A stretch of DNA of 64,000 nucleotides from Pocillopora damicornis (GCF_003704095.1 NW_020843442.1:124001-188000); one strand, 5' to 3'; shown: positions 36,507 through 56,830, numbered from the stretch's first letter. Notes: a model not told the origin generated them from the sequence alone. Numbers and translations are program-made.

Positions 36507-38959
36507 AATAATCCCGCATTTGGGTTTTATGCGCTGTAACTGATCCGAAAGTTTGACAATGCGAACTCCTGAACATGACTATTTTTACAAATGAAATATT
36601 TTACTGCGTTAGGAGTGAAATTAGAATTTGACCTTTATCATAAGTGCCTTGTTTGAAATCTTAACTTTTTCTAGGGGCTTTTAAATCAATATTTTTCAAC
36701 CAGTTGATTCTAATCTTAATTAGATGGTTTTAATATCGAGGCGGGTACAAGCTTCTCAGTAGGTGTGTTATTAACTTGGACGTTTTTTGATTGTCTGTCA
36801 ATTTAATTAATTTAATTCATTACAATTAACTCCTTCTTGAGTGAAGTGCTGGCTTTAAAATAAACCTCTTTATTCGCATTGGATTGAATGTTTTCGTTTT
36901 TTAACTTTAAGATTTATGCCCAGATTTTATACGCTGAGGGAAACAGGAACAAAATTCTTGCGTGACAAGAAAAGATCATTGAAGCGATAAATAACACAGC
37001 CAGATACTAATGATTTTCTGTTAGTAAACATCACGGAAAGCCAAATGTCTTCATATCTATTTATGCAATCATAATAAATGCCGTTTGCCTTGTTTACATA
37101 GACATCTTTTAAATCCCGCCATACCATCGAATTTCTAATTCCTCTCTTTGATCTAGAGGTTGTGGTTCTTTAAGCGGAAGAGCTCTGAGGGCGTTGGAGC
37201 AAAGAAATGCGTGGAATTTCTCTGTGACGAATACCTTTTTTTATCCAACTAAAAGGGTATTATGATGTAACCATAGGTAAAGGCTGCGAGTTGTGCACTT
37301 AGTTGTGGATTGTAACCGACGAGAAAGTCTCTCTTGAGGCCCCCAAAAATGCACAACTAACAGAGGGAATGTAGTAGGTGAGTGCAGTTGAGGCGTTTTT
37401 GCCCAGATGCACTCAAGCTTGAGGACAAGACATTTACTATCAAACATAAACAGTTGAATCCCACGTCTTACCCTCCGACACCCCCCCTCCCCCTCCCATC
37501 CAAAAAGAAACAAAAATTAAAAAATTAAAATATCCATCACATCACCAATCCCTACCCCCCCAAACCCCTTCTCTATTAGCTCATTATTAACGCTTCCCGC
37601 CCGCGGCAAAAGCAAGCGGGAAAGAGGTCTGGAAGGGGTCTGGCACTAGTTATTAGTGCCGGAGTCTCGATAAATCTTTTCGCAACTCATCTCAAACCTT
37701 CCCTCAGGCGAAGCTAAGGAAAGCGCGTCCGGTAGCACTGATAATATTTAGTTGTCAACTCGATACGCCTTTTAAACTTATGTTTTTCCCTGGTCAGCTT
37801 ACTTTAGAACTCAGAAATTTTAAGAATTTTAAAGCAGTGTGAGTAACTATACGTACAATCACTGGATATATACATGAACAATTTTAGTCTCAGTTCTGCT
37901 CAGATGACAGAGTGAGAGACGCGGCTGTGAATAGATGTGTGACCAACACTTAGGTTCCTCTTTTGATATGCAAACAAACGACCTCTGGAACTTTTGTTTT
38001 TAATTATGCATGAAATGTGGTAAATAAGAAAATTGTGGCGTCATTTATTTCATCATTCAGGTTTTGAAATATCTACTGCGCATGCGCGCGAGATGACACA
38101 CTTCTCTCAAAGATACTGATTCAGGTTTTTGTTTTGATTGTTTGCTTTTTAAGAAGAAAGCTGTCAACTTTGTTTGCTTTCTTTCTTTTCGTTTTGTATT
38201 CACGAATTTCCATCTTGGCCTGATGTTATATAGGCTGAGGACAAACACACACCATAATGATAACAGACATTGATGACAAACCTATTTAAAACGAACCAAG
38301 CGCCTTTCCATTGGGATCTCTGATCCCGCATACTAATGCCGTAGCGAATGGGAGATACCTAGCGGGCCTCCTGATGTGGAACGGCTTGGTGAAATCCGAA
38401 GGGCTAGCCACCCCCAGTTTTTTTCTTGGTCTAATACAAGATTATTTAAATCTTTGTAACGACATCAATATTAATAGACACCAAAAATATGATTTAGAGG
38501 CTTAGGGTTATCCATCTTCTGTTGAGATTTTGTGGTTTGTGAAAATCATGCAAGAACTTTGAAGTATACCTTGAGATTAGATATTTAACTTCAAATTATG
38601 AATTAATTAGAAACGTCTCTATAGTTGAATAGGCCTATCAAGGTGTTCTTAAACGATGGAAAGAAGCAAAATCGTGCAGAAAAGGACCGTAAATGTAGTG
38701 ACGAAAGTTTTTTTCCAGTGACTTCTGATTTCAACACTTTTTTCCGATAAAGTGCAAGCCACAAACATAATAAAGCGACAGTCTTTGGTAGCGGTTTTAC
38801 TTCCATTTTAAACATGATGTAAAAGCTGGTTAAATTACCAATAAATATAAATTTGCTACTACACTACAGGACCACATTTGAATTTTGACGACATATCAGT
38901 CTAGCATGAGCAGCGTGACAACAATTTTACGATTTCATTAAGTTCCCAAGTTTCGATCG

Positions 38960-41127
38960 TTAACTGATCTGTGCGTTCTTGAGACTTGAAGTAACTTGGC
39001 CAGCGGCTGTCATCAATGGACTTCCCTTGTACTCAGCGACACCATCGTCAGAGGTACAAAGGTCAGACTGAAAGAAAACGAAAACAAAAACATTTTTCAT
39101 TTTTTAACATTGTCATTATTTTGAGTTCGTACTAATATGACCCTTAAAGTTCGTTAGCAAATTATACGAGTAGGGTTCTTTGTTCATACGTTTGGTACAC
39201 TACCAAAGACTCCAGTGTCCATTTATGAGTATAGCGTCTTGCCCAAGAGCACAACATAATGACCTGGTCAGGACTTAAATCTAGACCTCTGTATCCAGAC
39301 TCCCCGGCTAAGAATGGCCTTCGAGCATGTTGGCAACTAGACACGAGCATTTCGGATCAATATCAGTATCGCCCACCCACTCCTCCCCTAACCCAACAAC
39401 AGTCAATTGATAACAAGTTAGGGTTAATGTTGGGTTAGGGGAGGGGTAGGTGGGCAGTTGCCCAGATACTGATATTGATCCAGCATTTCTTTACCCGCGG
39501 CTTACCCGCGGGAAAGTACGAGGCCTTGAGCAACGCGAGTCGGCGAGAGGTCTGCCAGGGGTCTGGCATTGATACCTCATTATTAGTGCCACCCCTTGCG
39601 AACCTCCCTCCGACTCGTCTTAAATCTTCCCATGGGCGAAGAAACACGCGTCTAGCATTACTAATGATAAGGACCTGCTTGTGAGCAAGGCCAACTAGGA
39701 CCTCACCGAGTCTAAAAGCGCCCCGCTGTTGATTTTACAGTGTACTTATAAATGTTGCGAGAAGGTCATAGAATAACAGCTTAAAGAATAGTTAACCTTT
39801 AAGGCTTCAAAAATCTTCTTCTTGGGATTCAGTTGTTCATCTGGCTCTAAATGAAAGAGAAAACGACAAATATAAGATGGAAAGTTGTTTAATATTTCAC
39901 TTAATTTGGCGTTGGTCAATATGAACAATATGGATAAACAAAGGATTCATTCGTTAATCAACTATCGATGCACTCTTTTTCTTAAATGTAAATTACTTAA
40001 GCAATGATCATATAAACCGCTTGTTATACGGTGGCGTGAAGTTTTCGTTGATTCTCCATACTTCGGTTAATTAAAACTCTGTAAGTATTAATGTCACCAA
40101 CGAGTCTACGTGTTTCTTATAAATCCTGGAAACGAAATTTTTGAAAACCAGCTTGGTTGTAAGCCACTCTCTTTTTCTCTACCACCTTACCTCCGGCAGT
40201 TTCATGTTCGTAGCCTTTCACCACGACTCTGTCACCAGGCTTGCATTCAGCTGGCGGGTTTAGAGGAATCACTTGTCTTTTACCATCAGTACTACAAACA
40301 AAAACCATAGGCTATTAGTCTGATTTTTTTCGCCTATGTCCATAAATTTGATTGTAAGTAAGAGCGTCCTTGCCANNNNNNNNNNCCCTCGCCAAACCCA
40401 TTCTTAGCTACTATTTTCACCCCTTTACTGAGATTACTAAGAGTAAAGATTTGCCGAAATCAATCTTCTCACTTCCAATAAACTTACGTCCAGATATTAC
40501 TATCATTTCAAGTTAGCTGTACCTTGCAATAATACGACAAAAACCTTCCTACAATTAAAATAGTTTCATCGAAACAGGCTTCTCTGCTACGCTATTTTCT
40601 AAAATAGTTTTTTAAATCACAGTCGGTTTCAACTTACAAAATAACAAGCATAAACTTACCCTGTTACAGATGCCGCCATGAGCATCGCTTCTGACGTGAC
40701 GCCTGACATAAGAAATCCACAACGTAAAATGAAAATGTATTCTTGCTCACTCAGAGACAAAAGGTGCAGGTGAAAACTGCTTGTCCAGGCATCAAATTTT
40801 CCACAATTAAGAAAAAAACGCACCTCTCATGTTAACAGGTTTTAAGTTGCACATCAATACAACAAGTCTGTCTTGAAGTTCCTCCAATGGAACATACTCT
40901 GCCAAACCACTTACAACAGTTCTAGGCTCTGGAAAAAAAATAACCAAAATATAGCATTCATACCTAAATAAAATCCTGAGAGTACTCGTGACGGTACAGA
41001 GCATTGGGCACAACATGACTGCCTTCGCCTCCACACCCTAGGATCAGTTTGCAGGTTCTCCGTACTGTTCTTTATGCATTTCCTATTGTACTTACAAGGA
41101 GAATTTGCTTAATAAAAGTAGAAATAG

Positions 41128-41166
<39 letters not shown>

Positions 41167-44100
41167 TACTATTAATGATAATAACGATGATGATAATTAT
41201 TTAGCAGCGGACAATCCATGAGGTGGCTCTTCTTATCCACCTTCTCCAGGTCGAATTGGAATTTTGGACATTGGTTTTTTGCAGAGAGAGGAAAACTGGA
41301 AACCCTGAGAAAAAACCCTCGGAGCAAGGACGAGAACCAACAACAAACTCAACTCAAATGTGACGTTGGGTCCTGCCTGGGCCACAGCGGAGGAAGGTGA
41401 GTGCTCTCGCCACTGTGCCATCCCTGCTCCCCTCAAGAGCTTCTTGGCCTTGCAATTATTTTCTTTATTTCATGAACTTAATGTTTGATTAAGGGGTGAA
41501 ACTGTTGGGAGAAACTAGATGCTTACTACTCTCAAGGATTAAAGAGTTAACAAAAACAAGGAGCGATAGGCTGAGGAAGGAAAAAAAAACTCTGTAAAGC
41601 TGATCTCATCACATACTTTCTTCTCCAATGTCAATTTCTTCTAAGTACAGGGAATCTGCATCAGGATGCTGTAATGAAAGGAAGTAAAAAAATGACAGAA
41701 TTTCCATCTCAGAGAGCAATATAGTAAACTTCTCCTAGGAGCAAAAGGTTTTAACCTCACAAGGAAAGCTGAAAACATTGTTCTGAACAAGGTTCCCTTG
41801 ATTTCAAACAATATCACAAAGGGAATAATAAAATGAAATGAAAACTCAATGCGCTCACTTTCTTTGCTGACAAAATTTTTCCAATTCTTAAATCCAACCT
41901 TGAAGGATCAACAGCTCTCTCAGGAGTGGCATTTGCTCCACCTTTTCCACCCTCTGAAATTCAAGAAATAACAAAGAAATGTTATAAATACTGACTAGTT
42001 ACTTTCATTTTAGTTGGCACTGTGCTTCAACAGCTACAAAGTAGACTAGTAAGTAAACTGAAGACAGTACTATTCTTGCACAGAGTAACAGTTGACTGTG
42101 TTGTGATTATCCAGGTGAAGATACAGTGGTACCCCTAGTCATGAAAAACACCCAGAGAAATGATAGCAGCAGAGTATGTGAGGCACAAGTATACTCTTAA
42201 TGAACCCTGTTCACTTACTTGCTTTCTTTGGAGCAGGGTATGCTTGTTTCATCAGCTTCTGTAGTTCAGGAGTTTGGAACTTCTTTCTTATGGGATCAAG
42301 AAGCTTTAGAAGGAAACAGACATTAATGATTGGTGAACAAATAGTTGGGAAACATAATATTGGTACAGCTCTTTCCTGAGTTAAAGCAGTGATTGGGTTC
42401 CTGATATGTAAACTTATATAATAACACATTAGTTGAGTTAATTTTCAAGGGCATACTTACTTACTTGAGCAGACTCAGTCATTTCAGCCTGAGCCTGAGC
42501 AACATAAGAGTTACAATGACTCTGAGAAGGGTCCAAAACATATTTAAGCCCAAGAACATAAACTGTATTAAAATACATTTTAGCCCATGGAAATCTCAAT
42601 TTTTGGCCTCAGAAATCTCCATTTTAGCCCACAAAATGAGCCACAATGCCCAACAAAGATAACAACATGTAGTAGAATTTGTTTAAATAATTCACCAACC
42701 TTGTACAACTAATATCCACGCAAAGGGAAGGAGTATATACATACCTCATTCAAAAAAGCTGTAACTCCCATTTTCAGATCAAGTGGATGTAGTTCCTGGT
42801 GAGGTGAACCAACGAAAAAAGCAGCAATACATGTGATGTCTACTAACATAAAATTTTCTTCTAAACAAAATTCATAGGATATATTAAATAACAAATGTTT
42901 TTGATGATAGACCAACCTTTCTGGCAAATGTTTCCTCAAGTGATGCATAATTTCTAAATGCAATTCTTCCTCCATTTTCTTCAGCTCTTTCTATCACAAA
43001 TTCTGAGCCCAAGGGAAACAAAATCACTTAAAATCACACTTGTTTCAATTAATTGTACTTTAGGGACAAAATATTTTGTTCTTCAGAAAGATGGTGCTCT
43101 TGGCCTAATGATCAACGTACTGGACTCAGGAATGAGAGAAAGGAATAAGTTTCTAAAGATCCTTTGGTACTGAGTGAATGGGGGGGGNNNNNNNNNNGAG
43201 GGGAAGATCTTGTTCGTAATTGTATATATTAACTGCCTCGAAGGCCAGATTATTTATTCTTGACCTACCTGTTTTATTCTTTATTTCCAACACCGAGAAG
43301 ATCACAAACTTGGCAAATGCAAGAATACCATTCTCCTCAATGTTTCCTTCTTCACAGAATGCCTAACATGAAGCAATTGGAACAAATTATTCATTACACA
43401 TAAATTGGAAACTGAGACATCTGAAGAAGAAGTGAGGTAATGCACATAAACTTCCCTAAATAACAGTAAATAAACAAATTTAAAATGATCCATTTTTAAA
43501 AACAGAGCAAAGCCAAAAGTTGTTTAACCCTAGACAGCATTATCACTGACCTTATTTAGCTTTTTCTTAACAACTGAAGCACCATCCAGAAGATCAATTT
43601 TTGAATCCTAGAGAAAAAAAATTTAAATTAATTGAATGATCTAATTACAACACTAATAAAGCTGATGGTGCACAAATCATCCATACTTGCTGCTGCTATT
43701 GCTGTCTTTTAGAAAGTAATCACCATGCTTTCAATAAAAAACGCGCATGAACATAGTGGCTTGAGCAACAGGAAAAAGCCATTTAGCCTTGCTAAATATG
43801 CAAAGAAAGAGAGGGTAAGAGCAGTGGTCATGTAATAAAATACTTATTGACTGAATTATATCAAGCTGAATGGGAAAATGTGTGGCTCTCTGTTGTGACT
43901 GCATACTTCATTACCTTGAGAAAAAAACTTTCCAACCATTTATCTCTGTCAATAAGTAGATATCAATATTGTTTCATAAAAACTGACCTCATCTGATGCG
44001 CTCATCTTGGTACCAGTGAGACCGGGCACTACATAGAAAATCAAGGGAACAGAAAATTAGCCCAAACAACCATCAGTAGAAATGAGGGTACAAAGAACAA

Positions 44101-47100
44101 AGAAGGATGATAAATGGAGATTGCTGGTGTTAGGATACAGGAGTACATACACATACATACACATACATACACACATACTTAATTGAGACTCCCTTCAACA
44201 GGGCATTTCACTCACAATGCTAACTGTTACATAATACATCTGGTAATTAAGGAAACTTATTTACAAACAGTAATTTAATTGAATTCAAAATATATTCAGA
44301 GTTCAAAACTATTTTGCATGAAACATATTAAAAAGTATCCACTCAAAACTATTAACTTCTTCAGTGTTCTTCATATTGTTGGCTAGCCCATTCCATTCCC
44401 TTGGACCTCAAAAGTAAAATGGCTTTAGCCCCATTTACAATCTACAAAAACCAAATTAGGTATACTGTACAATACCTCGGCAGCAAGATTGAAGAAAAAA
44501 GCCAAATCATCTGCATAGGTGGGGGGTTTTACAAGATAATTTTGTTTTGTCAACTGAGTAGATTGATAAATGTAATTTGGTTAGTCTGTAAAGACTTTCT
44601 AAAGCTGATCAACAAATCCTAGGCCCACAACCACAGGCTAGATGTCTGTCAACATTCTGGATAATTTCTTACCCATTGGGTTCATAAGATGAATTCTCTT
44701 GGCATAACCTAAAGAGGGAAGATACTGAAAAACAGATGGAAATATAATGTTAAGTAAAACAATAACACTGAAGATAACAGGTAGATGAAAATTTTGAGAA
44801 CATATTAAATGACTACTATGATGGACTTGTTCAGATGTCTGTACTCAAACAGAATCTACTACCTTTTCTGCAAATGTGAATATTTTGCGCTGATCGACAC
44901 CTCCAAACTGTGCATCTACTTTGAGGTATTCTTCATCAAGAGCCTGTTGTATAAAAAAAGAGATATGTAAAAATGGGTAGTTTTGACAAATGTGATCTGT
45001 AAACATGTAATAACTGTTGAAATATTTACTAAAAAGCAATGGGTGATTTGTTTGAATGCATGAAAAACATTTCATTGCGTAGTGTGACCATGAGCAGTTA
45101 GTTCTGTGAAGGACTGAGGTTTGTCATAAACACTGATTGAGGTATTTACAACTAGAGAGCAAGATCATTATCAGGAAAAAGTGAATAGTTCCTTATCAGT
45201 GGAATATTACAATTTGGACTTGCGGAGACTGATTGCTCAGGTTTGCTGTGATGTTATTGGCAACATGACACAAATACCATTCAATACTGGGATCACCATT
45301 TAATACAAGTTACAATATCAAGAAAGTGTATTGAGTATCACTTTACGGCACAAGTGCCAGACTGAGTTCTTTAACTTTGAAGATGTGATTGCTAATCCTC
45401 CCCTCAAGCTGCTACACATTTCCTTGTAAATTGGTTAAGAGAATTTGGTATTACACCAAGATAACAAATTCCACCCAATAAAGTTAATTAAAAGTATTTC
45501 TCATCACCTGTTTGCTGGAAGTTCATGGATATTTTAGGGAGAAGTTTCCTGTTAATCACTTCTGGGAGTTAACAGATTGTGTGATAATGAAATAAATACA
45601 AAGATTGTAACTACAATACCTGAAGTCCAGGGTACAATAGACCACTCAAAAGAGGATGTTGGACTTGCTTAACAACCTCTGAACCAGCTTTCTTTGCATC
45701 ATGCTAACAGAAATAAATCCAAATAAATCACTTAAAATAGATCCATAACATCTGATTTAGGGAGAATGCATTATTTTCCAATTTAAATTGATTACATGTA
45801 CATGATAATGGCTAGATTTTCTGATTATAAGGTTTTTAAAATAAAAATAACTTTTTAATGAGATTTTGAGTCATCATGCATCAAATATTTTTGCTCATGC
45901 ATGACTAATCTAAATGCATTATGTTACCAAATATTCCTCAGCTAAAACTGGGGGATATCTTAAGATATCACCCAAGTGATATTCTCCTATTATCAAACCA
46001 TACATCCACTACCATAAGTCTTTATTCAAAATTTAATTCAAGATGAGAGAAGATTTTATGATTGTTACAAAAGAACAGATTGAAATATTTGTTTGTTCAT
46101 AAAGTTGTACCAGAAAACACTAAAAAGAAAACATCCCAACCAGCAAAGAGTAAGCTATTTGTTAACACTGCAAAATACTTGAAGGATAATCAACACAATA
46201 ACCACAGACTATTTTTTTCAAAAATATGCTTATATATTTGTCCTTAGACATTATTTGTTCCTGGAAACTCACAGTTTCCACAAGCTTAGCTCTCACAAAA
46301 CTATCTGCACCTTGGAACAGGCAATATCTGCAGTAAAAATATCTGTGCACATTTTTGCACCAAATAAAGGCTATTGTTTATTTAGAAATGTCAAGCAGTA
46401 GTAACATTACCTCAGTGGCAACAGTGGAAAGTTTAAATATGTCCAGGACATAGGCTCTGAGAAAACACAAAGAGGAACAAAAAAATAAATCACTGTGCTG
46501 AATGAAGGCAACAAAGAGAGCAACACATGAAGTCTCAAACCACCAGCTCTAGAGCAGCTGATATTGGGTAATATTAATGATATTGGAACATCACAAAATG
46601 TTTACAATTACCTGTCCAGCTGATACTCTGTTCCTCGCACAAACTTTAATTTATCCAGGGGGACATTGATTGACTCTAGCATTGCCTACATGATAAAACC
46701 CAATGCGTAATGTCACCCCAAAATCATATTCATATCAGAGTTTGATAGACAAAGCCATTCATGATTTGTCATCTTTAACCCTATAACCCCCAAGATCTGA
46801 TTGTTAATTCTCCCCTATAGATGCAACAAATTTCCCTGTAACTACGTTATGAGAATTAGGTGTTAGATCGAGACAACAACCTGTACTTGATAAGTTTGAG
46901 AATTCTCATCACATCTTTGCTGGATAATGTATGGATATTATAGGGAGAAGTAACATATTAATCACTCCTGGGAATTAAAGGGTTAAAGAATAGTTACATG
47001 CGGAGACACGTTAGAACTAAGACATTGGTTGTCATCTGGTGTACATTCAACATCCATAATTATTTTCAACTTAAGTCCTTCCCAGGACTACTCTCACCCA

Positions 47101-49830
47101 GTCAATCAAAATAAATGATCAAATGTTTCACCTTAGTTCAAACAATTCACTGTAACAGGAAAAAGACTGACAAGTGTCATCAAAATCCAACCTTAATCAC
47201 TTCTTCGTAATACTTGACTCTGTGGGCTAACAGTTCCCAAGGTGCTTTCAGATTATCCAAATATGCATGAAGGTCAGCTAAAAGTACTGTCACCTACAAA
47301 AAAAAGCAAATGTTTCCATTATAGTACAAATAAAGTTATTCAAAAGCATAATGGTATATTTTATGCAGTGCAAAATGTATCATAAATATAATTCAAGCTC
47401 CAAATTCCTTTCTTGCTTTTCAGTGGTTAGTACTATTGATTAGATCCAAATACTGTCATGACAGAATATTTTTTACAACTATTTATAGTCATTTATAATG
47501 AAGTGATATCTCTTGGCAGTCCTATAAAGCTTATTAAGCCATATTAACTTTTCTCTCCTTTATCCTTAACCCTTTAACTCCCAGAAGTGATAAATATGTA
47601 ACTTCTTCCTATAATATCCATACACCATCCAGCAAACAGGTAATGAGAAAACCCAGACTTATCAGGTAGAAGTTGTTATCTTGATCTAACATCAAATCCT
47701 CATAACTAACTTAGAAAGAAATGTCTAGCCGCAAGGAGGGAGAATTGACAATTGGATCTTGGGAGTTAAAGGGTTAACATTTTTACACTGAAGTTCCCTT
47801 CCTCAGGCTTGTGATAATTTCACATAAAGGGGGAGTTTTTGTGTTACTGGACAATGTTTACACTGGGTGACAATTTCATTTTGACAATAAATCTTGAAAC
47901 AATATCATGTTAATATTGAGGAAAAAACTACATAACTTTTTTTATGTGAAATTGGCTTTCAATTAAACTAGAATGGATTGGGCACTTAATTTTCATCAAT
48001 TCTAGATGGAATGCATTGTCATTTTAAACACGGAACAAGGAGGAAAACAAAAAATACAAAATGTAATAAAAAATTAAGAAATTGTTCTGGTATAAAGCAT
48101 GTCATAACACCAATAAGCATATTCAAGCTGGTAACACACCTCACAGCCTGCCTTGAGGAAGTCAGCTATTTTTGTCATTGGTACAAAGTATGCAACATGT
48201 GGTTTTCCTGTTGTAGCTGTTCCCCAGTACAAAGATAAATTTTTCTCTTGTAAAATTGTTTTTAAGCGATCCTCACCGATAACTTCCTATGAAAATAATA
48301 AACAACATAATGTGACGTAAACTATAATAAAAATTGATTCTCTCCATGAATAGGTAAGTCATCTGATAAAGATTTGAGCATCTCAGTATATAGTGATCAT
48401 TATTAGCCTAGCCAATATAATGCAGTAGATCTACTAAAGCTGAACATCCCTCTCCCAGCCACACAGAAACATATCAAACCTCTCATGTGTGGACACCTCA
48501 CTTAATCCTCCACTCCCAAGATATCATTATTAATTCTCCTTACTGTCTGCTATACAAATCTTACAATGCTAGTTGAGAGAATTTGGAATCTAATGATAAT
48601 CCCCAACCAATATGTTTCTTTATTCCCATTACTTATCAGCTTGATAATGTATTAATGTTGTACACAGTGGTGCATCCAAACCTTGACCTGAAGGGGGGGG
48701 GGGGAGGGGAGACCTGGTTTTTTGTTGCCTGCCCTGCCAGCTTTTTTTTCCTCTGTTTTTCTTTTTTTTTTTTTTTGTAACCAAAATAAAGAAAGGGGGG
48801 TGGGCCCCCTAGGCTCCTCCCTTAGATCTGCCACTGATAGGGAGATATTCTGTCTTGGTCACTCAGGAGAGTTTAAGGGTTATCAATGATGAAGACATGG
48901 TCATTTGCATTAGACTAAATGTTTCTCTCTTTTATCAAGCATATAAATATTTTGCGGTTTCCCCCCTATAATGAAGACAACTCTTCATTCTGAAGAAATA
49001 ACTGGTTGAATTTCTATATAGCCCCATACAACTCTTAACAAAGTTACAGTCCCAAAGATTACATCATAGTCCTCTTTATCCAAGAACTTTATGCATAATA
49101 AAGTATGTGGCTGTGAGAAATCTCTTCAATAACCCAAAATATTGTGGCAAAGTGCCATTAAGCATATAGCTCTTTTTGTGAAAATCTGAAATATGTCTAA
49201 TTATATTAAATTGGACAGTGAGTGTGGGGATTCGAAGTACATACCATTCTGCAATAGGAAATCCCCTACATAGATAAAAAAATTCACCCAGAATTCCAAC
49301 CATTAAATTCCCCTGATATCAAAATCCAGTCACTTATCTACTTGTAAAAGACTATGATGGCAAAATCTCATTTACAAAAAGGTTGAGAGGTATTGAATGT
49401 TTCCTTCCTTCCATCAATATTCCACTTCATCTTTTCAGACCTCCTTCAAAGGAAGTAATATCTGTTAGGTCTCATTACCCGTCTCGTATATTTCTTGTTT
49501 TCACACAAACTACTCTGGAAAGATCTCTGTGATAAAGCGTTTGATTCATACCTTTTTCTTAAGTATTCATACCAGATAATAAAACAAAACTACTGAAAAT
49601 GAAAACCTATTTCCCTATATGTTTCGCCACAATGTAGCGCCAGAGCAGACGCGGATGAAAAAATAAGCGAATTACCCATTACATCATATCGAAATATAAT
49701 TGGAGAAAGTTCCATAACTTCAATCCACTTTTTCCTGAATTCGAATATAAACATCTGAAACCCTCACCTGTAAATTTCTGGTGATCAAATTGAATTTTTC
49801 GTCAGCAGAATACGAATCATTCGAAGCCAT
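38960..49830 (-). CDS. YARS1: Tyrosine--tRNA ligase, cytosolic type, with C-terminal EMAP II-like domain; 538 aa (580 aa from the upstream ATG at 49956)
   Basis: 21 exons: 49830-49768, 48286-48140, 47293-47192, 46685-46612, 46456-46411, 45703-45620, 44943-44863, 44724-44673, 44028-43988, 43607-43551, 43362-43269, 43002-42917, 42795-42745, 42303-42219, 41953-41859, 41668-41617, 40928-40824, 40702-40660, 40291-40191, 39846-39797, 39067-38960 (1617 nt). Motifs [61 protein letters not shown]. Confidence 0.96.
39230..39325 (-). mobile_element. Degenerate CORE-like SINE fragment
   Basis: Minus strand ...gtcctgaccaggtcattatgttgtgctcttgggcaagacgct; a possibly related head fragment lies at ~43092-43130 (+). 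Confidence 0.4.
39354..39482. mobile_element. Palindromic MITE, same family as 17295-17435
   Basis: TIR ggatcaatatcagtatc / gatactgatattgatcc. Confidence 0.75.
41128..41433 (-). mobile_element. tRNA-derived SINE with a (TTA)n tail, inserted in a MITE
   Basis: Minus strand ggggagcagggaTGGCACAGTGGcgagagc (A-box), core gtttgttgttggttctcgtccttgctccgagggtttttctc; (AAT)n tract at ~41128-41165 on plus; MITE halves at ~41030-41115 and ~41434-41550. Confidence 0.75.
44143..44450 (-). mobile_element. LINE 3' end remnant with an (ATGT)n-type tail
   Basis: Degenerate ORF2 C-terminus-like reading ([21 protein letters not shown]) followed by a microsatellite at 44143-44178. Confidence 0.45.
46775..46986. 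mobile_element. piggyBac-like MITE (TTAA-CCC...GGG-TTAA)
   Basis: ttaaccctataac...ggaattaaagggttaa; TTAA on both sides. Confidence 0.75.
47566..47777. mobile_element. piggyBac-like MITE
   Basis: Perfect TIR ttaaccctttaactccca / tgggagttaaagggttaa. Other degenerate relatives at ~25140-25355, 30960-31100, 45370-45572, 53118-53270 and 58063-58272. Confidence 0.85.
48502..48882. mobile_element. piggyBac-like MITE interrupted by a nested CAGTGG-terminated (hAT-like) MITE at 48665-48836
   Basis: Host halves flank an insert with TIRs cagtggtgcatcc / agatctgccactg; no clean TSD visible. Confidence 0.65.
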
Positions 49831-51484
49831 CCCAGTCGAATTGATGATCGAGGACAAAAATATGCGAGTATAAATATGTGGATTGAGTAACAGTCTACAG
49901 TTTCTCAGCTGATTTACACCAAAAGAAATCCTTGAGGTAAGCACCCGCGGAAGCATACAAGGAGATTGCCTAAAAAATTATATTTAACCTATGTTTCCCT
50001 TTTCTCGTGTGTTCGGGTCAAGTTGTTCTCACGCGATAACCTCTTTCGAAAGAAAATGCTTGGGTACCTAGCCTTCTGTAAAAACCCTTTGGATGCTGGG
50101 GAGAATCGCCCCAGGTAACCTGAAAAGTTGTTAGGATTCTTAACCTTTGGTTACAACTTCCTCAGACCGAGATTCTTAAATACACTTAGGACAACATTCT
50201 AAATAACTATTTTATTTTCAATCTTCATCCCTTGTGTCTATTTTCAAGGATACAATTGCCCTCAACCCTTATGAGTATTCTATGGCGTTTAGAACATAGC
50301 ATTTGCCTTACGATTTTCTTTTTTCATGACTAGCCCACACAGATGGGTGGCTTTTACAAAAATAAGTTACAACACTTTTAAAAATTTGGTTGTGCAAGTC
50401 ACCAAGAAAAAGAATGCTTAATCTAAACCTTCTTCATTTACATATCAAAGTTGTTTTGCAACGATTTAGTTAAGAGTTCTGTAGCTTGCTAACATCGGTT
50501 AACAAATTCCTCAGTCTCTACGTTAATGACAAATTGTTTAAACATCATTACGTTTTATATATATACCCAAGGTTCAAAGGGTCTTGAAAATTTTCGTTTG
50601 GTTAAAAATTATTAAGTAGTCTTATCATTAAACTCAAAAAATCATGAACTCTTTGATTTAATCTGACAAGTAAATTTTGTACTGATAGATCATGAGCTTC
50701 TGTCGATGCCCACAAACAAACCTCAAAGTGACAAACTAAGTCCTTCCCTTTTCACAGTTCAGTTTTTTTTTAAACACAACAACAAGCCATAAAGTATTTC
50801 CAATATTTGTGGTCAGTTTCTAAGTTTCACAGTGATGGTATCAATCCCAAGACCAAATCCAAATATTTCTATGAGGAGCTGACACAGAATTTAAAATAAT
50901 TTTGTTTTCTTTATTATTCATAGCCTCTTGAGGTTGAAAAAAAGGTGTAGTAGTTACAGTGTTCTATAACTAAAATCATAGCTGAATAAATACAGTATAT
51001 GCTTCCAATAAAAAGAAATGAAAATTCAGTAAAAATTGGGATAAACTTGCTAAAGGTCAACCCAAATTTTTTTTTAAATTTACACATTATCTGTGCATCA
51101 GTCCTCTCAAACTTTGCACCTCCATGCTCATTTGCAGCAATTATTTTGTGTTTTCTTAGAGTTTCTGTCATTAACTAAGACAGTCACTTCTCACTGAATG
51201 GACACCCCCATAGAGCAGACACCTTCAAATAAGGGACAATCAAAAGTAGTCCCAACCATTTCACTGACAAAAAAACTTAGCTTATTTCAACCACAAAAAG
51301 GAGGGATTAGTGTTGACAGTGTGCACCCCAGAAAGAGTCGACAATTCAATCTATAGCAAGTCAGCCAGTGTGTACATTGTATTTCAATGTACTACCAAAC
51401 CCCATTACCTAAATGATCCTGTAACTACAAAATCATTTACAATGTTGACATTAAGACCACCTCCATGGCTAAAGGCCAAAGATA

Positions 51485-52445
51485 TCAGTATGTTGGATAT
51501 GTCTGCTGCTGATAGTTATAACCATACTGATTGTACCCTTGCTGCTGTGAATACTGTTGGTTGGTAGGATACCCTTGAGTACTTCCATAAGCATTCTGTG
51601 TAGCAGGCTGCTGCTGCTGCTGCTGTTGCTGCTGCGGAGGTACATAAACCTGATAGCTCTGTGTCTGCGTCTGTCCTGCAGTTGAGTAGGGTGCTGCCCC
51701 TGCCGGTGAGCCGGTGGGTGGTGGGTAACTTTGTTGACTTGGTTGACTATAAGGCTGCTGCAGCGGTTGGCTAGCTGGGTACCCTGACACAGAACTTGTC
51801 ATACCTGGGTAAGAAGATTGCGTCTGGGTGGAGGTGGGGGCATAAGACTGCGGAGCATTTTGTCCAGTTTGTGTAGCCTGCTGAGGATACTGAGTTTGCT
51901 GGGCATATGATCCAGCCACTTTGTTGGCAGGTGATGGTGTAATGTTCTGCTGCCCTGGAGCCTGCATCTGCTGTGATGCTGGGATGGACTGTGGAGGGTA
52001 CCCTTGTGAGGTTGGCTCTTGGCTCTTGGAACCTGCTATTCAAAAGGCATTAAAAATTATTCATGGAAACTGTACAGTTTCTACCCAATAAAACACTGAA
52101 ACATCTAAACAGTAAATCAGACACCACTATTTTATTCATCTGCCCTTCTAAAACCTGCAAAAAAGTCATATCTTTTTTCTGAATTTTGAGTTTTAATTTA
52201 TCAATATCTTCCCTCCTTATTGAACCTATGCTGTAAAGGACAACATCAGTAAAATGCTATCTCTGGATAGAGTCTGGTAGATGCAGTGACCTAAAAATTA
52301 CAACCCAACAAATTACAAGGAAGGAGAGAGGAAGGATATTCTGCAATGGAATAACATCCCATCCAAGAGTGGGTTGGCAATACTCCAAGTCCCTTTTATA
52401 TTACTGACACTTACTTTACATCAATTAAGGCATGAATGGTGTCAT

Positions 52446-52494
<49 letters not shown>

Positions 52495-54543
52495 TATAAT
52501 GGGATAATTTAGTGTTATCAACTGGGTTGAAGACATAAATTGGCCATCGTAAAGAGTTTTAAGGCTGACATTTCAAGCATTAGCCCTTTGTTAGAGGGAT
52601 AGGTGTCAGATCATCAAATTGAAGCCAACCACAAGCAATTTGAAAGAAGGAAAACAAAGAACCATTACAGACACATTTTTCTCCAACTGGAATTTGTGTA
52701 TGGCAGTTTGATTGTTTTTCTAGGTTACTCCATGATTGTATTTATGGTCTTTCACAAACCTATTCCTTCAGTAGTGCCTGCAGTGCTAGGGTACAGGTGT
52801 CCTGAGATGTTTCCCGTCGAACTGTCTGGTTGTGCTTTGTCCTTAGCAAGAGGATCAAACATGGTCACCTCAGGGGTTGGTTTGGGAGGCATTTGGGCTG
52901 GAAGTGTTCTTTCATTAGGGGGACCTAAACAGAAACAGAGCATAAAACTATGGGCCATTTTCCTGATACTGATTTAGTTAGAATGTTTTGACCATCACAA
53001 TTAACACGAAAAGGAAACACTGCATAGGGACAAGCAAATAGTCCACTTTCATCATTTTCATTTCTAGCTCCAGACCCATAAGTACAAAAAAATTCAATGA
53101 GAGTTGTGATTGCTCCACTTAAACCCTTTACACCCTAACATCAGTATGTATATTCTCCATACTGTTTTCTGTAGATTTCTTAAGGAATTGACAAAAAGAA
53201 TTTGTTTAACAATCAAGGGCTTTTTCAGTTGGTGATCATTTCCTTTATTGTTGCGAGCTAAATGTTTGATTCAGGGATGATATTGTAAGGAGAAATTAGA
53301 TGCCAGTTAGAAGTCAACTCAATTCATGATCCCTGTTCAAAGCATAATGAGCATGGTAAAAAAAAAAACTAATCCAAACTCTTCATTACAACTATGACGA
53401 TGCATATTGGAGATTCATGAGGCAAGCAAATGCTATTACCGAAAACTTTCCAGGATACTACTTCTAAGAACTTGAAATTTTTAAACAGCTGACTTTCTTT
53501 ACAAACCTTGCATACTAGGTATATCTTTTGGCTGTTCTTGTCCACCCTTCCTCTCCTCATTTTCATCCTTTACTTCCAGTCTATTCAGAAGATAATTAAT
53601 CCTATCCCTAACCTCTGTCAATTCCCTTCTAAACTCTGCAACCAGTGTGTGTTCAGGAGGTCTAGGTACACCATTAACTGCAGAGGAAATTGTTTAAATG
53701 ATCATGATTTAAAATTGACAAGAATTCTACCACAACTAGAATTAAAAAAGAAATTGACAGAGAAACAAAAATTTAAATTTTACTGAGCAATAAAAGACTT
53801 GCTGGAGATTGAAAACTTTCAGACAGCAGTCCTCAAACATTTGCCATTTGTCAAGTTTGGAAATCTAGTTTGCATATTCCATAATTGTCTTTACAGAATT
53901 CCTCTGCTCGTTTCAAAAACTTAAGCAATACAACTTATGATATAGCTAGTTATCCCTAAGTTAAATCTCAAGACATGTGTCAAGGTATTAAACTTAATGA
54001 ATGAAACAGTCCAAGGATAACATCTTTGCATCGTTAGGAACATACTCACAAAAAGAAACGTTCCACAAGTAAATGTAATTTAATTAACTTACCAAACAAT
54101 GTAATCTTTAATATTCTGCATATTGTTCGTGCAAAGGCAAGATCAGAACTGTCGAAAATAGTTACTAGATCGCCATCTGAAACAGAGGGGAAAAACTATT
54201 AAATGAAGCTTAGTGTCGTGCCTAAAGGAATGGTTTTCAACAATCAGCCGAGTTTATCGTCAAATCTGAAAGCCAAAAAGACCAGTCGACTAAACTCACC
54301 TTCATCCTTATATTTGATGGTAATATCATCTGTGCTACTAAGTTTACCACGGTAAACTCTCTGCATCATCAATAGTAGATCATCATAAGTCAAATCTTCG
54401 TTGTGAATTGGAATGCATCTTATATCATCCCCTAGACGAGCCTTAATAATCAATGTACCACTGAGATCTACATTGCCGCCTACAAAATTGACTCCTCTAT
54501 TTCCAGGAACTCCAATTGAGAATGTCTCTGGAGTATAATTCAT
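51485..54543 (-). CDS. TFG: Protein TFG (PB1 domain, coiled coil, P/Q/Y-rich tail), ~400 aa
   Basis: Exons 54543-54300, 54176-54093, 53677-53516, 52924-52760, 52032-51485 (1203 nt); [58 protein letters not shown] motif. Confidence 0.93.
52440..52602. mobile_element. Penelope-associated repeat fragment with a decayed hammerhead motif
   Basis: Shares segments with 57755-57992 (one direct, one inverted); minus strand ctaacaaagggctaatgcttgaaatgtcagc. Confidence 0.6.
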
Positions 54544-54736
54544 TTCCGAATGGGTATAAAAGTCGTGACAATTTCTATTTTCCAGTACTGTCCTTGTGAC
54601 AAAAATTACGTTGCTCTTCCAGAACTCAATGACTTCATTCGTTTCCAGTCTTCCAAAGATTAATCTTAATACTTGTACGCAGTACTTCTCCGACATAATC
54701 AAAGAACGCCTTGAAATTCTCTCTGCTATTGTCACC
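54544..54736. promoter_or_regulatory. Compact bidirectional promoter/5' UTR region between TFG and the NSUN gene
   Basis: Divergent ATGs at 54543(-) and 54737(+) are separated by 193 bp. Confidence 0.7.
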
Positions 54737-56830
54737 ATGTTTTCACGAATCTTTTTACAAAATAGTTTCTATCGCCATTTTCTATCTACTTTTAATAAAA
54801 GATATTACAAGAAGAAGTCATGGAAGGTAAGATGTATGCAGTTTTAATCATAACTGAAAACATTGCCTTGGGTAACTGGTTATTATTGATCTTATTCACA
54901 TACTGCGGCTTCGATATATTCACGATCAAAGTGTAAATTCATGGCCTTTTTCAAAGGTAAAATATTGCACATGATCACATTTTCACAGACCTAAGAGAGG
55001 CTCTAACATAGAAATGTGTTTTGAAAAACTGCGAGGCCCAAAGACAACCAACGTTCTTCGAGCTAAGGCTTGCTAGTCACCAATCCCCCCAGAGTATTGA
55101 GTATGGAAGAGCTGATTGACAAATTGTCATCAGGCTTTTAGACTTGATTACCAGCTGCTGTTCGGAAAATGAGCCCGCACTCAACCCCCACCACCCCCCC
55201 CAAGTCACAATCATTTTTTCTCGCAAGGATGGAACATTAAACTTGAGAAAACAGCAGAAACCGAACCTATTGGGCTTTCAGCTCTTTAAATAGCTATAAC
55301 AGGGATCTTTATTTTTAATATCTTATCTTTTGTTTTAGATGCAAAGGAAAAAAGCTTCTTCTTTGGAACATTTTGAAACCTTTTATGCTGACCAGTTTGG
55401 TGAGAAGTGGCCTATGATTTTTGAGTCACTTAAATTACCAATCCAGCACTGTGCAATGGTCAACAAGTTTTCTGCAGTTGAAGAAGTGCAGGAAAAACTC
55501 TCTTTGGTGGCAGCACGGCCTCAAAGTGTAGAACCTTTTACAAGCACCCTTAGTGAAGATGAGCAAAGTCAACTTACGTTGTCCTGTTACTTTCCAAGTT
55601 CTGAGGAAAGTGTTAGATTTCCCAAGCAAGGAGAGACAAGCAATGGATTTTTTGATTACTATCTTCTGGATGCTTCATCTCTCCTACCCGTTTTAGCTCT
55701 TGACATTTGTCCAGACAATACAGTGCTTGATATGTGTGCTGCTCCTGGAGGTAAAAGTGTCCTGATATCACAGTTTCTTTCAATAAGAGGTTGTATTATT
55801 GCCAGTGAAATTGCAAACCAGAGAAGGGCAAATCTTATTAAGGTAGGAGTGATTAACCTCTGAGGTAACCATGGTGATTTGTTTAAGAAGCATGCTTCTC
55901 AAATGTGTCAGACAGCAATTTGTATTGTGGCCATTCATCCACAGAAAATCGTTATAATTAGGTTTTTCTGATTTGAAAGACTATTTGAATAGATTTAAAA
56001 TGAGTTCATTATGAAAAAAAATTGGTAAATCGAGAGGGAGGGTCCTGGGGTGTGGCCCTCCCCACTCCCACATAGGAGCTGTGAGCTTTTTTAACTTCAT
56101 GTCAGACGCCAAAATTCTAGCAACAACAGGATTGCATGTGACTACTCAATATGAAGTATTTAAATTTAATTGTCTTGAAACATTTCTCAGCTTACTTAGG
56201 CTATGGTAAAAAAAATGTGTTTTCTAAATTAAAGCTTTAAAGCTCAAAAATTTCAGGATTCATCCCTGAAAAGGTTTATGTATTACTGTTCTTTCTGATC
56301 TTCTTGGTTAGGTAATTAAAGACTACATACCAAAGATCTCCAAAACTAAAGACTTGGTGCATGTCAGGAGCTTGACAGGTTTCAAGTACGGCGAGTACGA
56401 ACCAAACACGTATGACAGGGTATTACTTGATGTACCATGTTCTGCTGAGCGACATAACTTGCACACAAACTTTGAGTTTAGTTTTTGGTCAGAAAAACAC
56501 TCTGCAGCAAACGCTAACATACAGAAGAAGCTTCTTATGTCTGCGTTACAAACAGTTGTTCCTGGCGGTATAGTGGTTTATTCTACTTGCTCCATGTCGC
56601 CGATAGAAAATGACGGAGTCATAGATGAGGTTTTATCAAAATGTTCAGGAAACAAGCAGCTCAAAGTTGAAGTTGTGGACTCGCAGTTTGCAAATAATTC
56701 GTTTGCGAAAATGTTTGATTACAGAACGACCAAACACGGGGTACTTGTCGTCCCTTCTAAGACTAAGAATTGGGGTCCGATGTATTTTTGTAAACTTCAA
56801 CGACTGGCTATCGAATCTGAGCAATTCTAA
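54737..56830 (+). CDS. NSUN4: Mitochondrial RNA m5C methyltransferase of the NSUN4/NSUN3 family, ~370 aa
   Basis: Exons 54737-54826, 55339-55842, 56312-56830 (1113 nt); basic presequence; [56 protein letters not shown]4 versus NSUN3 is not certain. Confidence 0.85.

What the first reader, a model, noticed from the sequence alone, without database searches (positions are those of the whole stretch)
49768..49956. Cytosolic TyrRS has an upstream in-frame ATG adding a 42-aa mitochondrial-type presequence (candidate dual targeting by leaky scanning)
Seen: the frame is open from ATG 49956 to the conserved-region ATG 49830, adding MLPRVLTSRISFGVNQLRNCRLLLNPHIYTRIFLSSIINSTG (5 Arg, no Asp/Glu, Leu/Ser/Ile rich). 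R-I|F-L-S-S-I-I-N-S| fits the R-10 MPP/MIP cleavage pattern. The upstream ATG has weak context (tgtATGc) and the downstream one strong context (gggATGG). Established: cnidarian mtDNA typically encodes only tRNA-Met and tRNA-Trp, and most mitochondrial aminoacyl-tRNA synthetases were lost. Inference: this one gene supplies both cytosolic and mitochondrial TyrRS, so imported tRNA-Tyr can be recharged inside the organelle.
Basis: partly seen in the sequence, partly recalled or inferred. Interest (0 to 1): 0.85.

Follow-up and report, generated by a model that had tools for sequence, protein, structure and literature searches.

The report
Coral TyrRS gene with mitochondrial presequence
The single tyrosyl-tRNA synthetase gene of this coral has a conserved upstream start codon that adds a mitochondrial-type leader, so one gene probably serves both cytosol and mitochondria; this arrangement was already predicted for cnidarians in 2010.

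Summary
Exon 1 of a 21-exon cytosolic-type TyrRS gene (minus strand) has ATG 49956 in frame with the ancestral start ATG 49830. This adds 42 codons with 5 Arg and no Asp/Glu. An in-frame stop lies 8 codons upstream.

RNA contigs from several studies contain ATG 49956, and it is the first ATG on the leader.

The extension is not chance. In-frame, basic, acid-poor extensions of 30-46 aa, each followed by the retained ancestral Met, occur in every cnidarian TyrRS I could inspect, 15 sequences in all. RefSeq models of Montipora and Acropora palmata include it.

In all 9 nucleotide sequences the first ATG has T at -3, the second has a purine at -3, and no ATG lies between them in any frame. That is the signature of leaky scanning.

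The genome has no bacterial-type TyrRS (YARS2), while mt-TrpRS is found by the same search. Its mtDNA encodes only tRNA-Met and tRNA-Trp.

The R-10 cleavage motif is not conserved outside pocilloporids. Localisation and start-site usage are untested.

The principle is published (Haen et al. 2010; Pett and Lavrov 2015), so this is a new member of a known kind. The scan had no earlier related finding on other DNA.

The parts
38025..50042 (-). Transcribed span of the cytosolic-type TyrRS (YARS1) gene, 21 exons
   Evidence: The 2775-nt Logan transcript contig L011 maps in 21 blocks at 96.5-100% identity. Its product P0194 (580 aa) carries PF00579 and PF01588.
38960..49956 (-). Coding span of the long (580-aa) form, from ATG1 to the stop
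   Evidence: The gene lies at L011:87-1829, mapped to the window. The last ORF ends at 38960.
49957..50042 (-). 5' leader seen in a transcript contig. It holds no ATG in any frame.
   Evidence: L011:1-86 equals the window here. There is no ATG on this strand between 49957 and 50196.
49978..49980 (-). In-frame TAA that closes the frame upstream of ATG1
49954..49956 (-). ATG1, in weak context (T at -3, C at +4). Proposed start of the mitochondrial form.
   Evidence: T at -3 is found in 9 of 9 cnidarian sequences.
49831..49956 (-). 42-codon N-terminal extension, the candidate mitochondrial presequence (net charge +5, no acidic residue)
   Evidence: It is conserved as an open in-frame extension across Cnidaria.
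49828..49830 (-). ATG2, the ancestral start in strong context (G at -3, G at +4). Proposed start of the cytosolic form.
   Evidence: It aligns with the start of placozoan and bilaterian YARS1.
49768..49830 (-). Conserved N-terminal 21 codons of mature TyrRS, ending exon 1
   Evidence: Invariant among five close relatives. The motif ending in LITRNLQ is shared with all animal YARS1.
48287..49767 (-). Intron 1 (GT..AG)
   Evidence: The splice joint is present in RNA contigs of three runs from three studies (table 5). Sequence read.
48137..48286 (-). Exon 2, 50 codons with the class I signature region
   Evidence: (PF00579 positions 3-40)
50209..51484 (-). 3' UTR of the upstream neighbour (TFG-like gene). 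It leaves about 170-250 nt for the TyrRS promoter.
   Evidence: The neighbour's last coding ORF stops at 51485. A separate RNA contig in run X1 covers 50209-52041. AATAAA lies at 50216-50211.

Best explanation
This is the only TyrRS gene of the coral. Its mRNA carries two in-frame start codons 126 nt apart.

Ribosomes that initiate at the first one (49956, poor context) would make a 580-aa protein. Its first 42 residues would act as a mitochondrial presequence, to be imported and probably cleaved by MPP near the ancestral Met. Ribosomes that scan past it would initiate at the ancestral start (49830, good context) and make the 538-aa cytosolic enzyme.

The mitochondrial form would charge imported nuclear tRNA-Tyr. 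The mtDNA has no tRNA-Tyr gene, and the bacterial-type mitochondrial TyrRS (YARS2) has been lost.

Shown here: the two ATGs, the open frame and its composition; presence of ATG1 in mRNA contigs; conservation of the architecture across Cnidaria; absence of YARS2 from the assembly; and the two-tRNA mtDNA.

Inferred: translation from ATG1, import, cleavage, leaky scanning as the way the two forms are apportioned, and tRNA-Tyr import.

My odds: about 0.8 that the extension is a mitochondrial presequence giving dual localisation, and about 0.6 that leaky scanning on one mRNA is the main mechanism.
For: (1) Anatomy.

(2) Transcripts: the X1 polyA contig (100% identical) joins exon 2 to 49767-49961. 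The X3 and X8 contigs run through ATG1. L011 has an 86-nt leader without ATG. Leaders of 53-133 nt occur in other species, five of eight without an upstream ATG.

(3) Conservation: 15 cnidarian sequences, the window included, carry an extension of 30-46 aa before a retained Met. They have net charge +3 to +9 and 3% Asp/Glu, against 15.6% in the next 40 residues. Scleractinians share an N-terminus beginning ML-x-R. The frame is kept across indels: extension lengths are 42, 40, 34 and 30 codons. Two contigs whose called product started at the second Met (L012, L028) also have the open extension upstream. The sequences form one cnidarian clade with 100/98 support.

(4) Leaky-scanning signature in 9 of 9 nucleotide sequences: T at -3 of ATG1, a purine at -3 of ATG2, G at +4 of ATG2 in 7 of 9, and no ATG in any frame in between. 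The chance of no ATG is 0.06-0.39 per sequence by dinucleotide shuffle and 0.27-0.54 by codon shuffle. The products are about 2e-5 and 6e-3 over five roughly independent lineages.

(5) Need: PF00579, TIGR00234 and PF22421 find no second TyrRS. PF00579 finds mt-type TrpRS in three exons and PF01409 finds two PheRS-alpha loci. The mt contig has only tRNA-Met and tRNA-Trp(UCA).

(6) Literature: cnidarians keep only two mt-aaRS, and cytosolic counterparts replace the rest (PMC4558845; PMC10375062).
Against: There is no localisation, N-terminal proteomic or ribosome-profiling data.

All RNA evidence is assembled contigs, which cannot show 5' ends. Transcripts starting between the two ATGs cannot be excluded. 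One contig stops 5 nt upstream of ATG1.

The hydrophobic moment of the extension is ordinary. TargetP and MitoFates could not be run.

Sequence constraint on the extension is weak. pN/pS is about 0.5-0.85 over the first 20 codons. Among near-identical haplotypes almost all changes are non-synonymous. This is normal for presequences, but it is also what a non-coding stretch would show at short range.

The R-10 motif is not conserved beyond pocilloporids.

Absence of YARS2 rests on a draft assembly searched exon by exon.

The taxon of the unnamed Logan and JGI contigs rests only on tree placement.
Confidence: 0.65

Rival explanations
1. Dual targeting is real, but the two forms come from two mRNA populations with different 5' ends, as in yeast HTS1 and VAS1. 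Long transcripts would contain ATG1. Short ones would start inside the 126-nt spacer and contain only ATG2.
For: Contigs cannot show 5' ends. The X1 contig ends only 5 nt upstream of ATG1, and leader lengths differ between runs. The promoter must sit in a space of only about 170-250 nt behind the neighbour's 3' end.
Against: A pure two-promoter scheme does not need T at -3 of ATG1 in 9 of 9 sequences, nor a spacer free of ATGs in every frame in 9 of 9 sequences. No contig beginning inside the spacer was seen, though contigs are poor evidence for this.
Confidence: 0.2
2. Only the long form is made in quantity. The cytosolic pool would arise from incomplete or reversed import of one translation product ('echoforms'). 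The second Met would then be just an internal residue.
For: Single-product dual distribution is documented for other proteins (review PMC4428415, which appears only in the hit list and which I did not read). Nothing here measures initiation.
Against: The ancestral Met is retained at the same place in all 15 cnidarian sequences, with a purine at -3. ATG1 is always in poor context, the opposite of what is expected for the sole start of an abundant housekeeping enzyme.
Confidence: 0.07
3. The extension directs the protein somewhere other than mitochondria. One option is the secretory pathway, recalling the secreted cytokine fragments of vertebrate TyrRS. Another is that it has a regulatory role only.
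For: Some scleractinian extensions begin with a short, rather hydrophobic run after ML-x-R. No predictor was run.
Against: In the window's sequence, Arg, Ser, Asn or Gln interrupt every hydrophobic run, so there is no signal-peptide h-region. The composition (Arg-rich, acid-free, Ser/Thr/Leu-rich) is that of matrix presequences in all lineages. The loss of YARS2 and mt-tRNA-Tyr creates a specific need for a mitochondrial TyrRS.
Confidence: 0.05
4. The upstream ATG and open frame are a chance feature of the 5' UTR and are not translated into a functional peptide.
For: In this window 150 ATG-started open stretches of at least 42 codons exist, so open frames of this size are common. Acid-free ones are 8.7% of them. 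Short-range substitutions look neutral.
Against: The same architecture recurs in every cnidarian lineage examined despite near-complete sequence turnover and several indels, always in frame and always basic.
Confidence: 0.03

Closest known systems
Cnidarian cytosolic aaRS taking over mitochondrial aminoacylation (Haen, Pett and Lavrov 2010, Mol Biol Evol 27:2216; Pett and Lavrov 2015, PMC4558845)
   Same: Same phylum and same logic. The mtDNA has at most two tRNA genes, only mt-TrpRS and mt-PheRS are retained, and cytosolic enzymes are inferred to serve mitochondria. In this genome I re-found mt-type TrpRS, two PheRS-alpha loci, no YARS2, and a tRNA-Met plus tRNA-Trp mtDNA.
   Different: That work was on Nematostella and on presence or absence of genes. 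From memory, its abstract also states that nearly all cytosolic aaRS are predicted to be mitochondrially targeted, but the paper itself is not held in the library. Added here: the case of TyrRS in a coral, conservation of the extension across Scleractinia and medusozoan-like lineages, and the conserved weak/strong start pair with an ATG-free spacer.
Human GARS1 (and yeast VAS1, HTS1): one gene, two in-frame AUGs, long form mitochondrial, short form cytosolic (from my own knowledge; human GlyRS and LysRS dual activity is mentioned in PMC4394434)
   Same: Two in-frame starts. An N-terminal presequence is present only on the long form. There is no separate mitochondrial paralogue.
   Different: In yeast the two forms come from mRNAs with different 5' ends. 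In human GARS1 they come from distinct mRNA isoforms and regulatory elements. Here the sequence signature points to leaky scanning on one mRNA. TyrRS is not dual-targeted in bilaterians, which keep YARS2.
Retargeting of cytosolic aaRS to mitochondria in plants after mt-tRNA loss (Sileneae; PMC10375062)
   Same: Loss of mt-tRNA genes is followed by cytosolic aaRS gaining N-terminal targeting extensions.
   Different: Plants keep the organellar aaRS because of plastids. Non-bilaterian animals lose them outright, as that paper itself notes.
YARS2, the bacterial-type mitochondrial TyrRS of most animals
   Same: It performs the function proposed for the long form: charging tRNA-Tyr in the matrix.
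   Different: It belongs to a different lineage (bacterial type, with an S4-like C-terminal domain) and charges mtDNA-encoded tRNA-Tyr. It is not detectable in this genome.

Membership tests
Eukaryotic cytosolic-type TyrRS (YARS1) with EMAP-II-like C-terminal domain | Class Ib catalytic domain (Pfam PF00579) | tested here: met
   Exons at window 48134-48247 and 44839-44982 match PF00579. The full-length product P0194 carries PF00579.
Eukaryotic cytosolic-type TyrRS (YARS1) with EMAP-II-like C-terminal domain | C-terminal tRNA-binding (EMAP-II-like) domain, PF01588 | tested here: met
   P0194 carries PF01588. The corresponding exons lie at about 40117-40930.
Eukaryotic cytosolic-type TyrRS (YARS1) with EMAP-II-like C-terminal domain | Groups with animal YARS1 in a tree | tested here: met
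   Sits inside a cnidarian clade (100/98) that lies within Metazoa, next to Stylophora pistillata.
Mitochondrial matrix presequence | N-terminal, roughly 15-50 residues, net positive, almost no acidic residues, rich in Arg/Leu/Ser | tested here: met
   42 aa, +5, no Asp/Glu. The same holds in 14 other cnidarian sequences: +3 to +9, 3% Asp/Glu.
Mitochondrial matrix presequence | Amphipathic helix | tested here: inconclusive
   The maximum 18-residue hydrophobic moment is 0.43, exceeded by 22% of random open frames in the window.
Mitochondrial matrix presequence | MPP-type cleavage motif (Arg at -2, -3 or -10) | tested here: inconclusive
   The R-10 pattern fits here and in the Stylophora-like sequence. 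Other corals show Arg 2-12 residues before the second Met but no common motif, and one has none.
Mitochondrial matrix presequence | Positive call by a trained predictor (TargetP, MitoFates) and demonstrated import | not testable with these tools
Dual-targeted aaRS made from two in-frame start codons | Two in-frame AUGs, the downstream one at the ancestral start, with the extension only on the long form | tested here: met
Dual-targeted aaRS made from two in-frame start codons | No dedicated mitochondrial paralogue in the genome | tested here: met
   PF00579, TIGR00234 and PF22421 find only this TyrRS locus. The same PF00579 search finds WARS2. This is limited by the completeness of a draft assembly.
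Dual-targeted aaRS made from two in-frame start codons | Both protein forms exist, in the two compartments | not testable with these tools
   Needs proteomics or imaging.
Leaky scanning | First AUG of the mRNA in suboptimal context, next AUG in good context | tested here: met
   T at -3 of ATG1 and a purine at -3 of ATG2 in 9 of 9 sequences. ATG1 is the first ATG of the leader in the window and in most contigs.
Leaky scanning | No AUG in any frame between the two starts | tested here: met
   0 in 9 of 9 sequences, where 0.8-2.2 are expected by shuffling.
Leaky scanning | Both proteins arise from one mRNA species | tested here: inconclusive
   Contigs hold both ATGs but cannot show 5' ends or exclude shorter mRNAs.
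YARS2 (bacterial-type mitochondrial TyrRS) | Bacterial-type catalytic core plus SYY/S4-like C-terminal domain | tested here: not met
   This gene is of the cytosolic type. There is no PF22421 match anywhere in the genome.

The most novel reading that the evidence does not exclude
The pair 'weak first AUG, ATG-free spacer, strong ancestral AUG' may be an ancient translational rheostat. It would date from the time cnidarians lost mt-tRNAs and YARS2, and would have been kept in Anthozoa and Medusozoa alike while the presequence itself turned over completely. It would set the mitochondrion-to-cytosol ratio of TyrRS from a single mRNA. If so, the same three-part signature should mark the other roughly 17 cytosolic aaRS, and other dual-localised proteins, in cnidarian genomes. 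It could then be used to find them from sequence alone.
Probability: 0.5. Interest if true: 0.45.

Novelty: new member of a known kind. Interest (0 to 1): 0.33.

Why it matters
Coral mitochondria must translate 13 or so proteins with only two tRNAs of their own. How the other tRNAs get charged inside the organelle has been inferred mostly from missing genes.

This locus gives a concrete, testable example for tyrosine. It is one gene with a defined 42-residue leader, two defined start codons, and a comparative signature that predicts how the two forms are apportioned.

It also shows that several public gene models (Stylophora pistillata, Acropora cervicornis) and several automatic ORF calls start at the second Met and so miss the mitochondrial form.

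It does not change the accepted picture for cnidarians.

Tried and rejected
(1) The Haen et al. 2010 paper is not held in the library. Its content is cited through PMC4558845 and PMC10375062 and, where marked, from memory.

(2) A word-indexed search with exon 1 alone found only four near-identical genomic ORFs from Tara Pacific coral metagenomes. These are too close to test constraint: 5/126 differences against about 2.5% in the intron, nearly all non-synonymous.

(3) The representative search with exon 2 gave mostly short fragments without names. It was useful only to reach a full-length query.

(4) The Montipora protein P0274 is not on record by exact look-up, so there is no DNA for it.

(5) ARAGORN missed tRNA-Trp on the mt contig. 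Rfam found it, and the anticodon UCA was read by eye.

(6) The hydrophobic moment did not single out the extension.

(7) pN/pS on the first 20 codons is below 1 in all pairs, but it is saturated and noisy. I do not lean on it.

(8) Two word searches of earlier scan notes for other synthetases with this arrangement gave nothing relevant.

The database's own full-length product of a transcript contig (P0194) was used instead.

(10) Not attempted: a screen of the other cytosolic aaRS and a negative control on cytosolic TrpRS.

Full report
**What is at the coordinates**

On the minus strand, ATG 49956 opens a frame that runs through a second ATG at 49830 to a splice donor. The exon ends at 49768 and GT follows at 49767/6. 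That is 63 codons, 42 of them before the second ATG.

A TAA at 49980-49978 closes the frame 8 codons upstream. There is no ATG in any frame between the two starts, and none on this strand between 49957 and 50196.

The 21 residues after the second ATG end in the motif LITRNLQ, with which animal cytosolic TyrRS begins. Exon 2 (48286-48137) continues with the highly conserved class I signature region.

A 2775-nt public transcript contig (L011) maps to the window in 21 exons, from 50042 to 38025. It encodes a 580-aa product (P0194) with PF00579 and PF01588.

P0194 stands in for it.

**Organism**

The window is G000:C77:124001-188000, in an assembly of 234.35 Mb and 4393 contigs.
- Runs holding it are labelled coral or marine metagenome.
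- Near-identical ORFs come from Tara Pacific coral metagenomes.
- In a TyrRS tree the gene sits beside Stylophora pistillata, inside Scleractinia.
- From memory, the assembly statistics match the published Pocillopora damicornis draft. I could not verify the name.

**Is ATG1 in the mRNA?**
- A polyA RNA contig of run X1 is 100% identical to the window. It joins exon 2 to 49767-49961, ending 5 nt upstream of ATG1.
- Contigs of X3 and X8 come from a form about 3% diverged and run unbroken from 49767 to 51597.
- L011 carries an 86-nt leader equal to window 49957-50042.
- In other species the leader in contigs is 53-133 nt, and five of eight leaders have no upstream ATG.

The upstream neighbour, on the same strand, is a TFG-like gene. 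Its last ORF stops at 51485 and its 3' UTR reaches about 50209. The TyrRS promoter must therefore lie in the 170-250 nt between. The X3 and X8 contigs that bridge the two genes show read-through or overlap, not a longer TyrRS leader.

Contigs cannot show 5' ends, and no raw-read run was offered.

**Is the extension more than chance?**

On its own it is only suggestive. Among 149 other ATG-started open stretches of at least 42 codons in the window:
- 8.7% lack acidic residues.
- 4.7% also have 5 or more basic residues.
- None has 5 Arg.
- The hydrophobic moment of the extension is ordinary.

Close relatives (four metagenomic ORFs, and organism A in the RNA runs) keep the frame. They differ at 8 of the 42 extension residues, at none of the 21 mature residues, and at one of the 15 intron-encoded residues read through. 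This is uninformative at such short distance.

The decisive evidence is comparative. Using P0194 residues 1-90 as the query, and translating upstream of two ORF calls that began at the second Met (L012; L028), I found an in-frame extension of 30-46 aa before a retained Met in every member of the cnidarian TyrRS clade I could inspect.

| Group | Sequences with the extension |
|---|---|
| Pocilloporids | the window's gene (P0194/L011); a Stylophora-like contig (L013, 30 aa, with an in-frame 12-codon deletion) |
| Other scleractinians | L014, L015, L012, P0272 |
| RefSeq models | Montipora capricornis, Acropora palmata |
| Separate cnidarian lineage | L016 |
| Aurelia group | Aurelia, L017 |
| Second medusozoan-like group | P0332, P0306, L018, L028 |

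- Scleractinian extensions share a recognisable N-terminus beginning ML-x-R. Beyond them the sequence is not alignable, but the composition is constant.
- Net charge is +3 to +9, and 13 of the 15 have no acidic residue in the first 20.
- Asp/Glu make up 3% overall, against 15.6% in the next 40 residues.
- Placozoan and nearly all bilaterian sequences in the same searches start at the ancestral Met.
- The public models for Stylophora pistillata and Acropora cervicornis start at the second Met. Their sister sequences (L013, A. palmata) have the extension, so this is an annotation choice.

**How the two forms are made**

In all nine nucleotide sequences:
- ATG1 has T at -3 and C or T at +4.
- ATG2 has a purine at -3, and G at +4 in seven.
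- No ATG occurs between them in any frame.

| Null model | Chance of an ATG-free spacer, per sequence | Product over five roughly independent lineages |
|---|---|---|
| Dinucleotide shuffle | 0.06-0.39 | about 2e-5 |
| Codon shuffle (tests only out-of-frame ATGs) | 0.27-0.54 | about 6e-3 |

By the established rules of scanning initiation (the Kozak context rules, from my own knowledge), this is what leaky scanning requires, and a two-promoter scheme does not need it. I therefore favour leaky scanning at about 0.6. Alternative 5' ends remain open at about 0.2.

**Is a mitochondrial TyrRS needed from this gene?**

Six-frame profile searches of the whole assembly gave the following.
- PF00579 finds only three loci: this gene; a bacterial-type TrpRS on C55 in three exons with a KMSKS motif (WARS2); and cytosolic TrpRS on C4019.
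- TIGR00234 finds nothing new.
- The bacterial TyrRS C-terminal domain PF22421 finds nothing.
- PF01409 finds two PheRS-alpha loci, as expected if mt-PheRS is kept.

The mt contig C4393 is 17,415 bp. It carries cox1 with 10 in-frame TGA and only two tRNAs: Met(CAU) and Trp(UCA).

This is the pattern published for Cnidaria: two mt-aaRS retained and cytosolic enzymes replacing the rest (PMC4558845; PMC10375062). Absence in a draft assembly is not proof. However, the same method found WARS2 easily.

The R-10 pattern does fit this sequence and the Stylophora-like one. It is not shared by other corals, which have an Arg 2-12 residues before the second Met or, in one case, none. I treat it as a lead for the cleavage site only.

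**Comparison with what is known, and verdict**

The mechanism class is one gene with two in-frame starts, where the long form is mitochondrial. This is classical for aaRS (yeast VAS1 and HTS1, human GARS1; from my own knowledge).

The cnidarian case was predicted for Nematostella in 2010. RefSeq already models the long form in two acroporids.

- TyrRS in a pocilloporid.
- The breadth of conservation across Cnidaria.
- The start-context and ATG-free-spacer signature.
- Direct confirmation of the genomic background in this very assembly.

The finding is real and well read. It is a new member of a known kind and of moderate interest. It is a good substrate for a simple reporter experiment.

Noticed in passing
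window 50209-54738, minus strand: The upstream neighbour looks like a TFG homologue. It has a PB1-like exon ORF at 54244-54738 and a Gln/Pro/Tyr-rich last coding exon at 51485-51967, then a 3' UTR of about 1.3 kb with AATAAA at 50216-50211. Its 3' end lies only about 170-250 nt from the TyrRS leader. RNA contigs of two runs (X3, X8) bridge the two genes.
   Followed up: partly
window 49957-50155: The putative TyrRS promoter and leader are much more diverged between the window and 'organism A' than intron 1 is. They show 16 substitutions and 3 indels in about 200 nt, against about 1.5% in the intron.
   Followed up: no
window 47566-47777, 48512-48662, 48840-48865, 52444-52500: Short stretches inside and around the gene reach summed RNA contig depths in the thousands to tens of thousands, with many loose ends and odd joints. 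They are presumably copies of abundant interspersed repeats expressed elsewhere.
   Followed up: no
G000:C4393 (L020, L021): The complete-looking 17,415-bp mitochondrial contig is the last contig of the assembly. ARAGORN in its default mode misses tRNA-Trp(UCA) at L021:5202-5271, which Rfam RF00005 finds at 30.3 bits. cox1 has 10 in-frame TGA.
   Followed up: yes
G000:C55:260912-263115; G000:C2740:160419-161931; G000:C788:677149-679332: These are the mt-type TrpRS (WARS2) locus and two PheRS-alpha-type loci. The C2740 matches contain several stop codons, which may be introns or a decayed copy. Which of the two is mt-PheRS was not worked out.
   Followed up: no
proteins P0013, P0160, P0172, P0177, P0189, P0218, P0225, P0238, P0240, P0254, P0256: These are double-length TyrRS of 670-730 aa made of two tandem catalytic-domain copies, the first degenerate. 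They come from unnamed Logan and JGI contigs and resemble, from memory, the pseudo-dimeric TyrRS of kinetoplastids. Spider-mite proteins (Tetranychus, Panonychus) show a similar duplication.
   Followed up: no
proteins P0203-P0209, P0219-P0221, P0198: Cyprinid fish YARS1 isoform models carry a basic N-terminal extension of about 25-30 aa before the ancestral Met, although fish keep YARS2. This may be an annotation artefact or an unrelated isoform.
   Followed up: no
proteins P0270 (Stylophora pistillata), P0156 (Acropora cervicornis); ORF calls P0224, P0311: Public models and automatic ORF calls start at the second Met, although the upstream in-frame extension is open in the same or sister sequences. 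The mitochondrial form is therefore under-annotated.
   Followed up: yes
window 55339-55863, plus strand: An ORF matches an RsmB/NSUN-type RNA methyltransferase. PF01189 is recorded on the homologous gene in L009. It lies head to head with the TFG-like gene.
   Followed up: no
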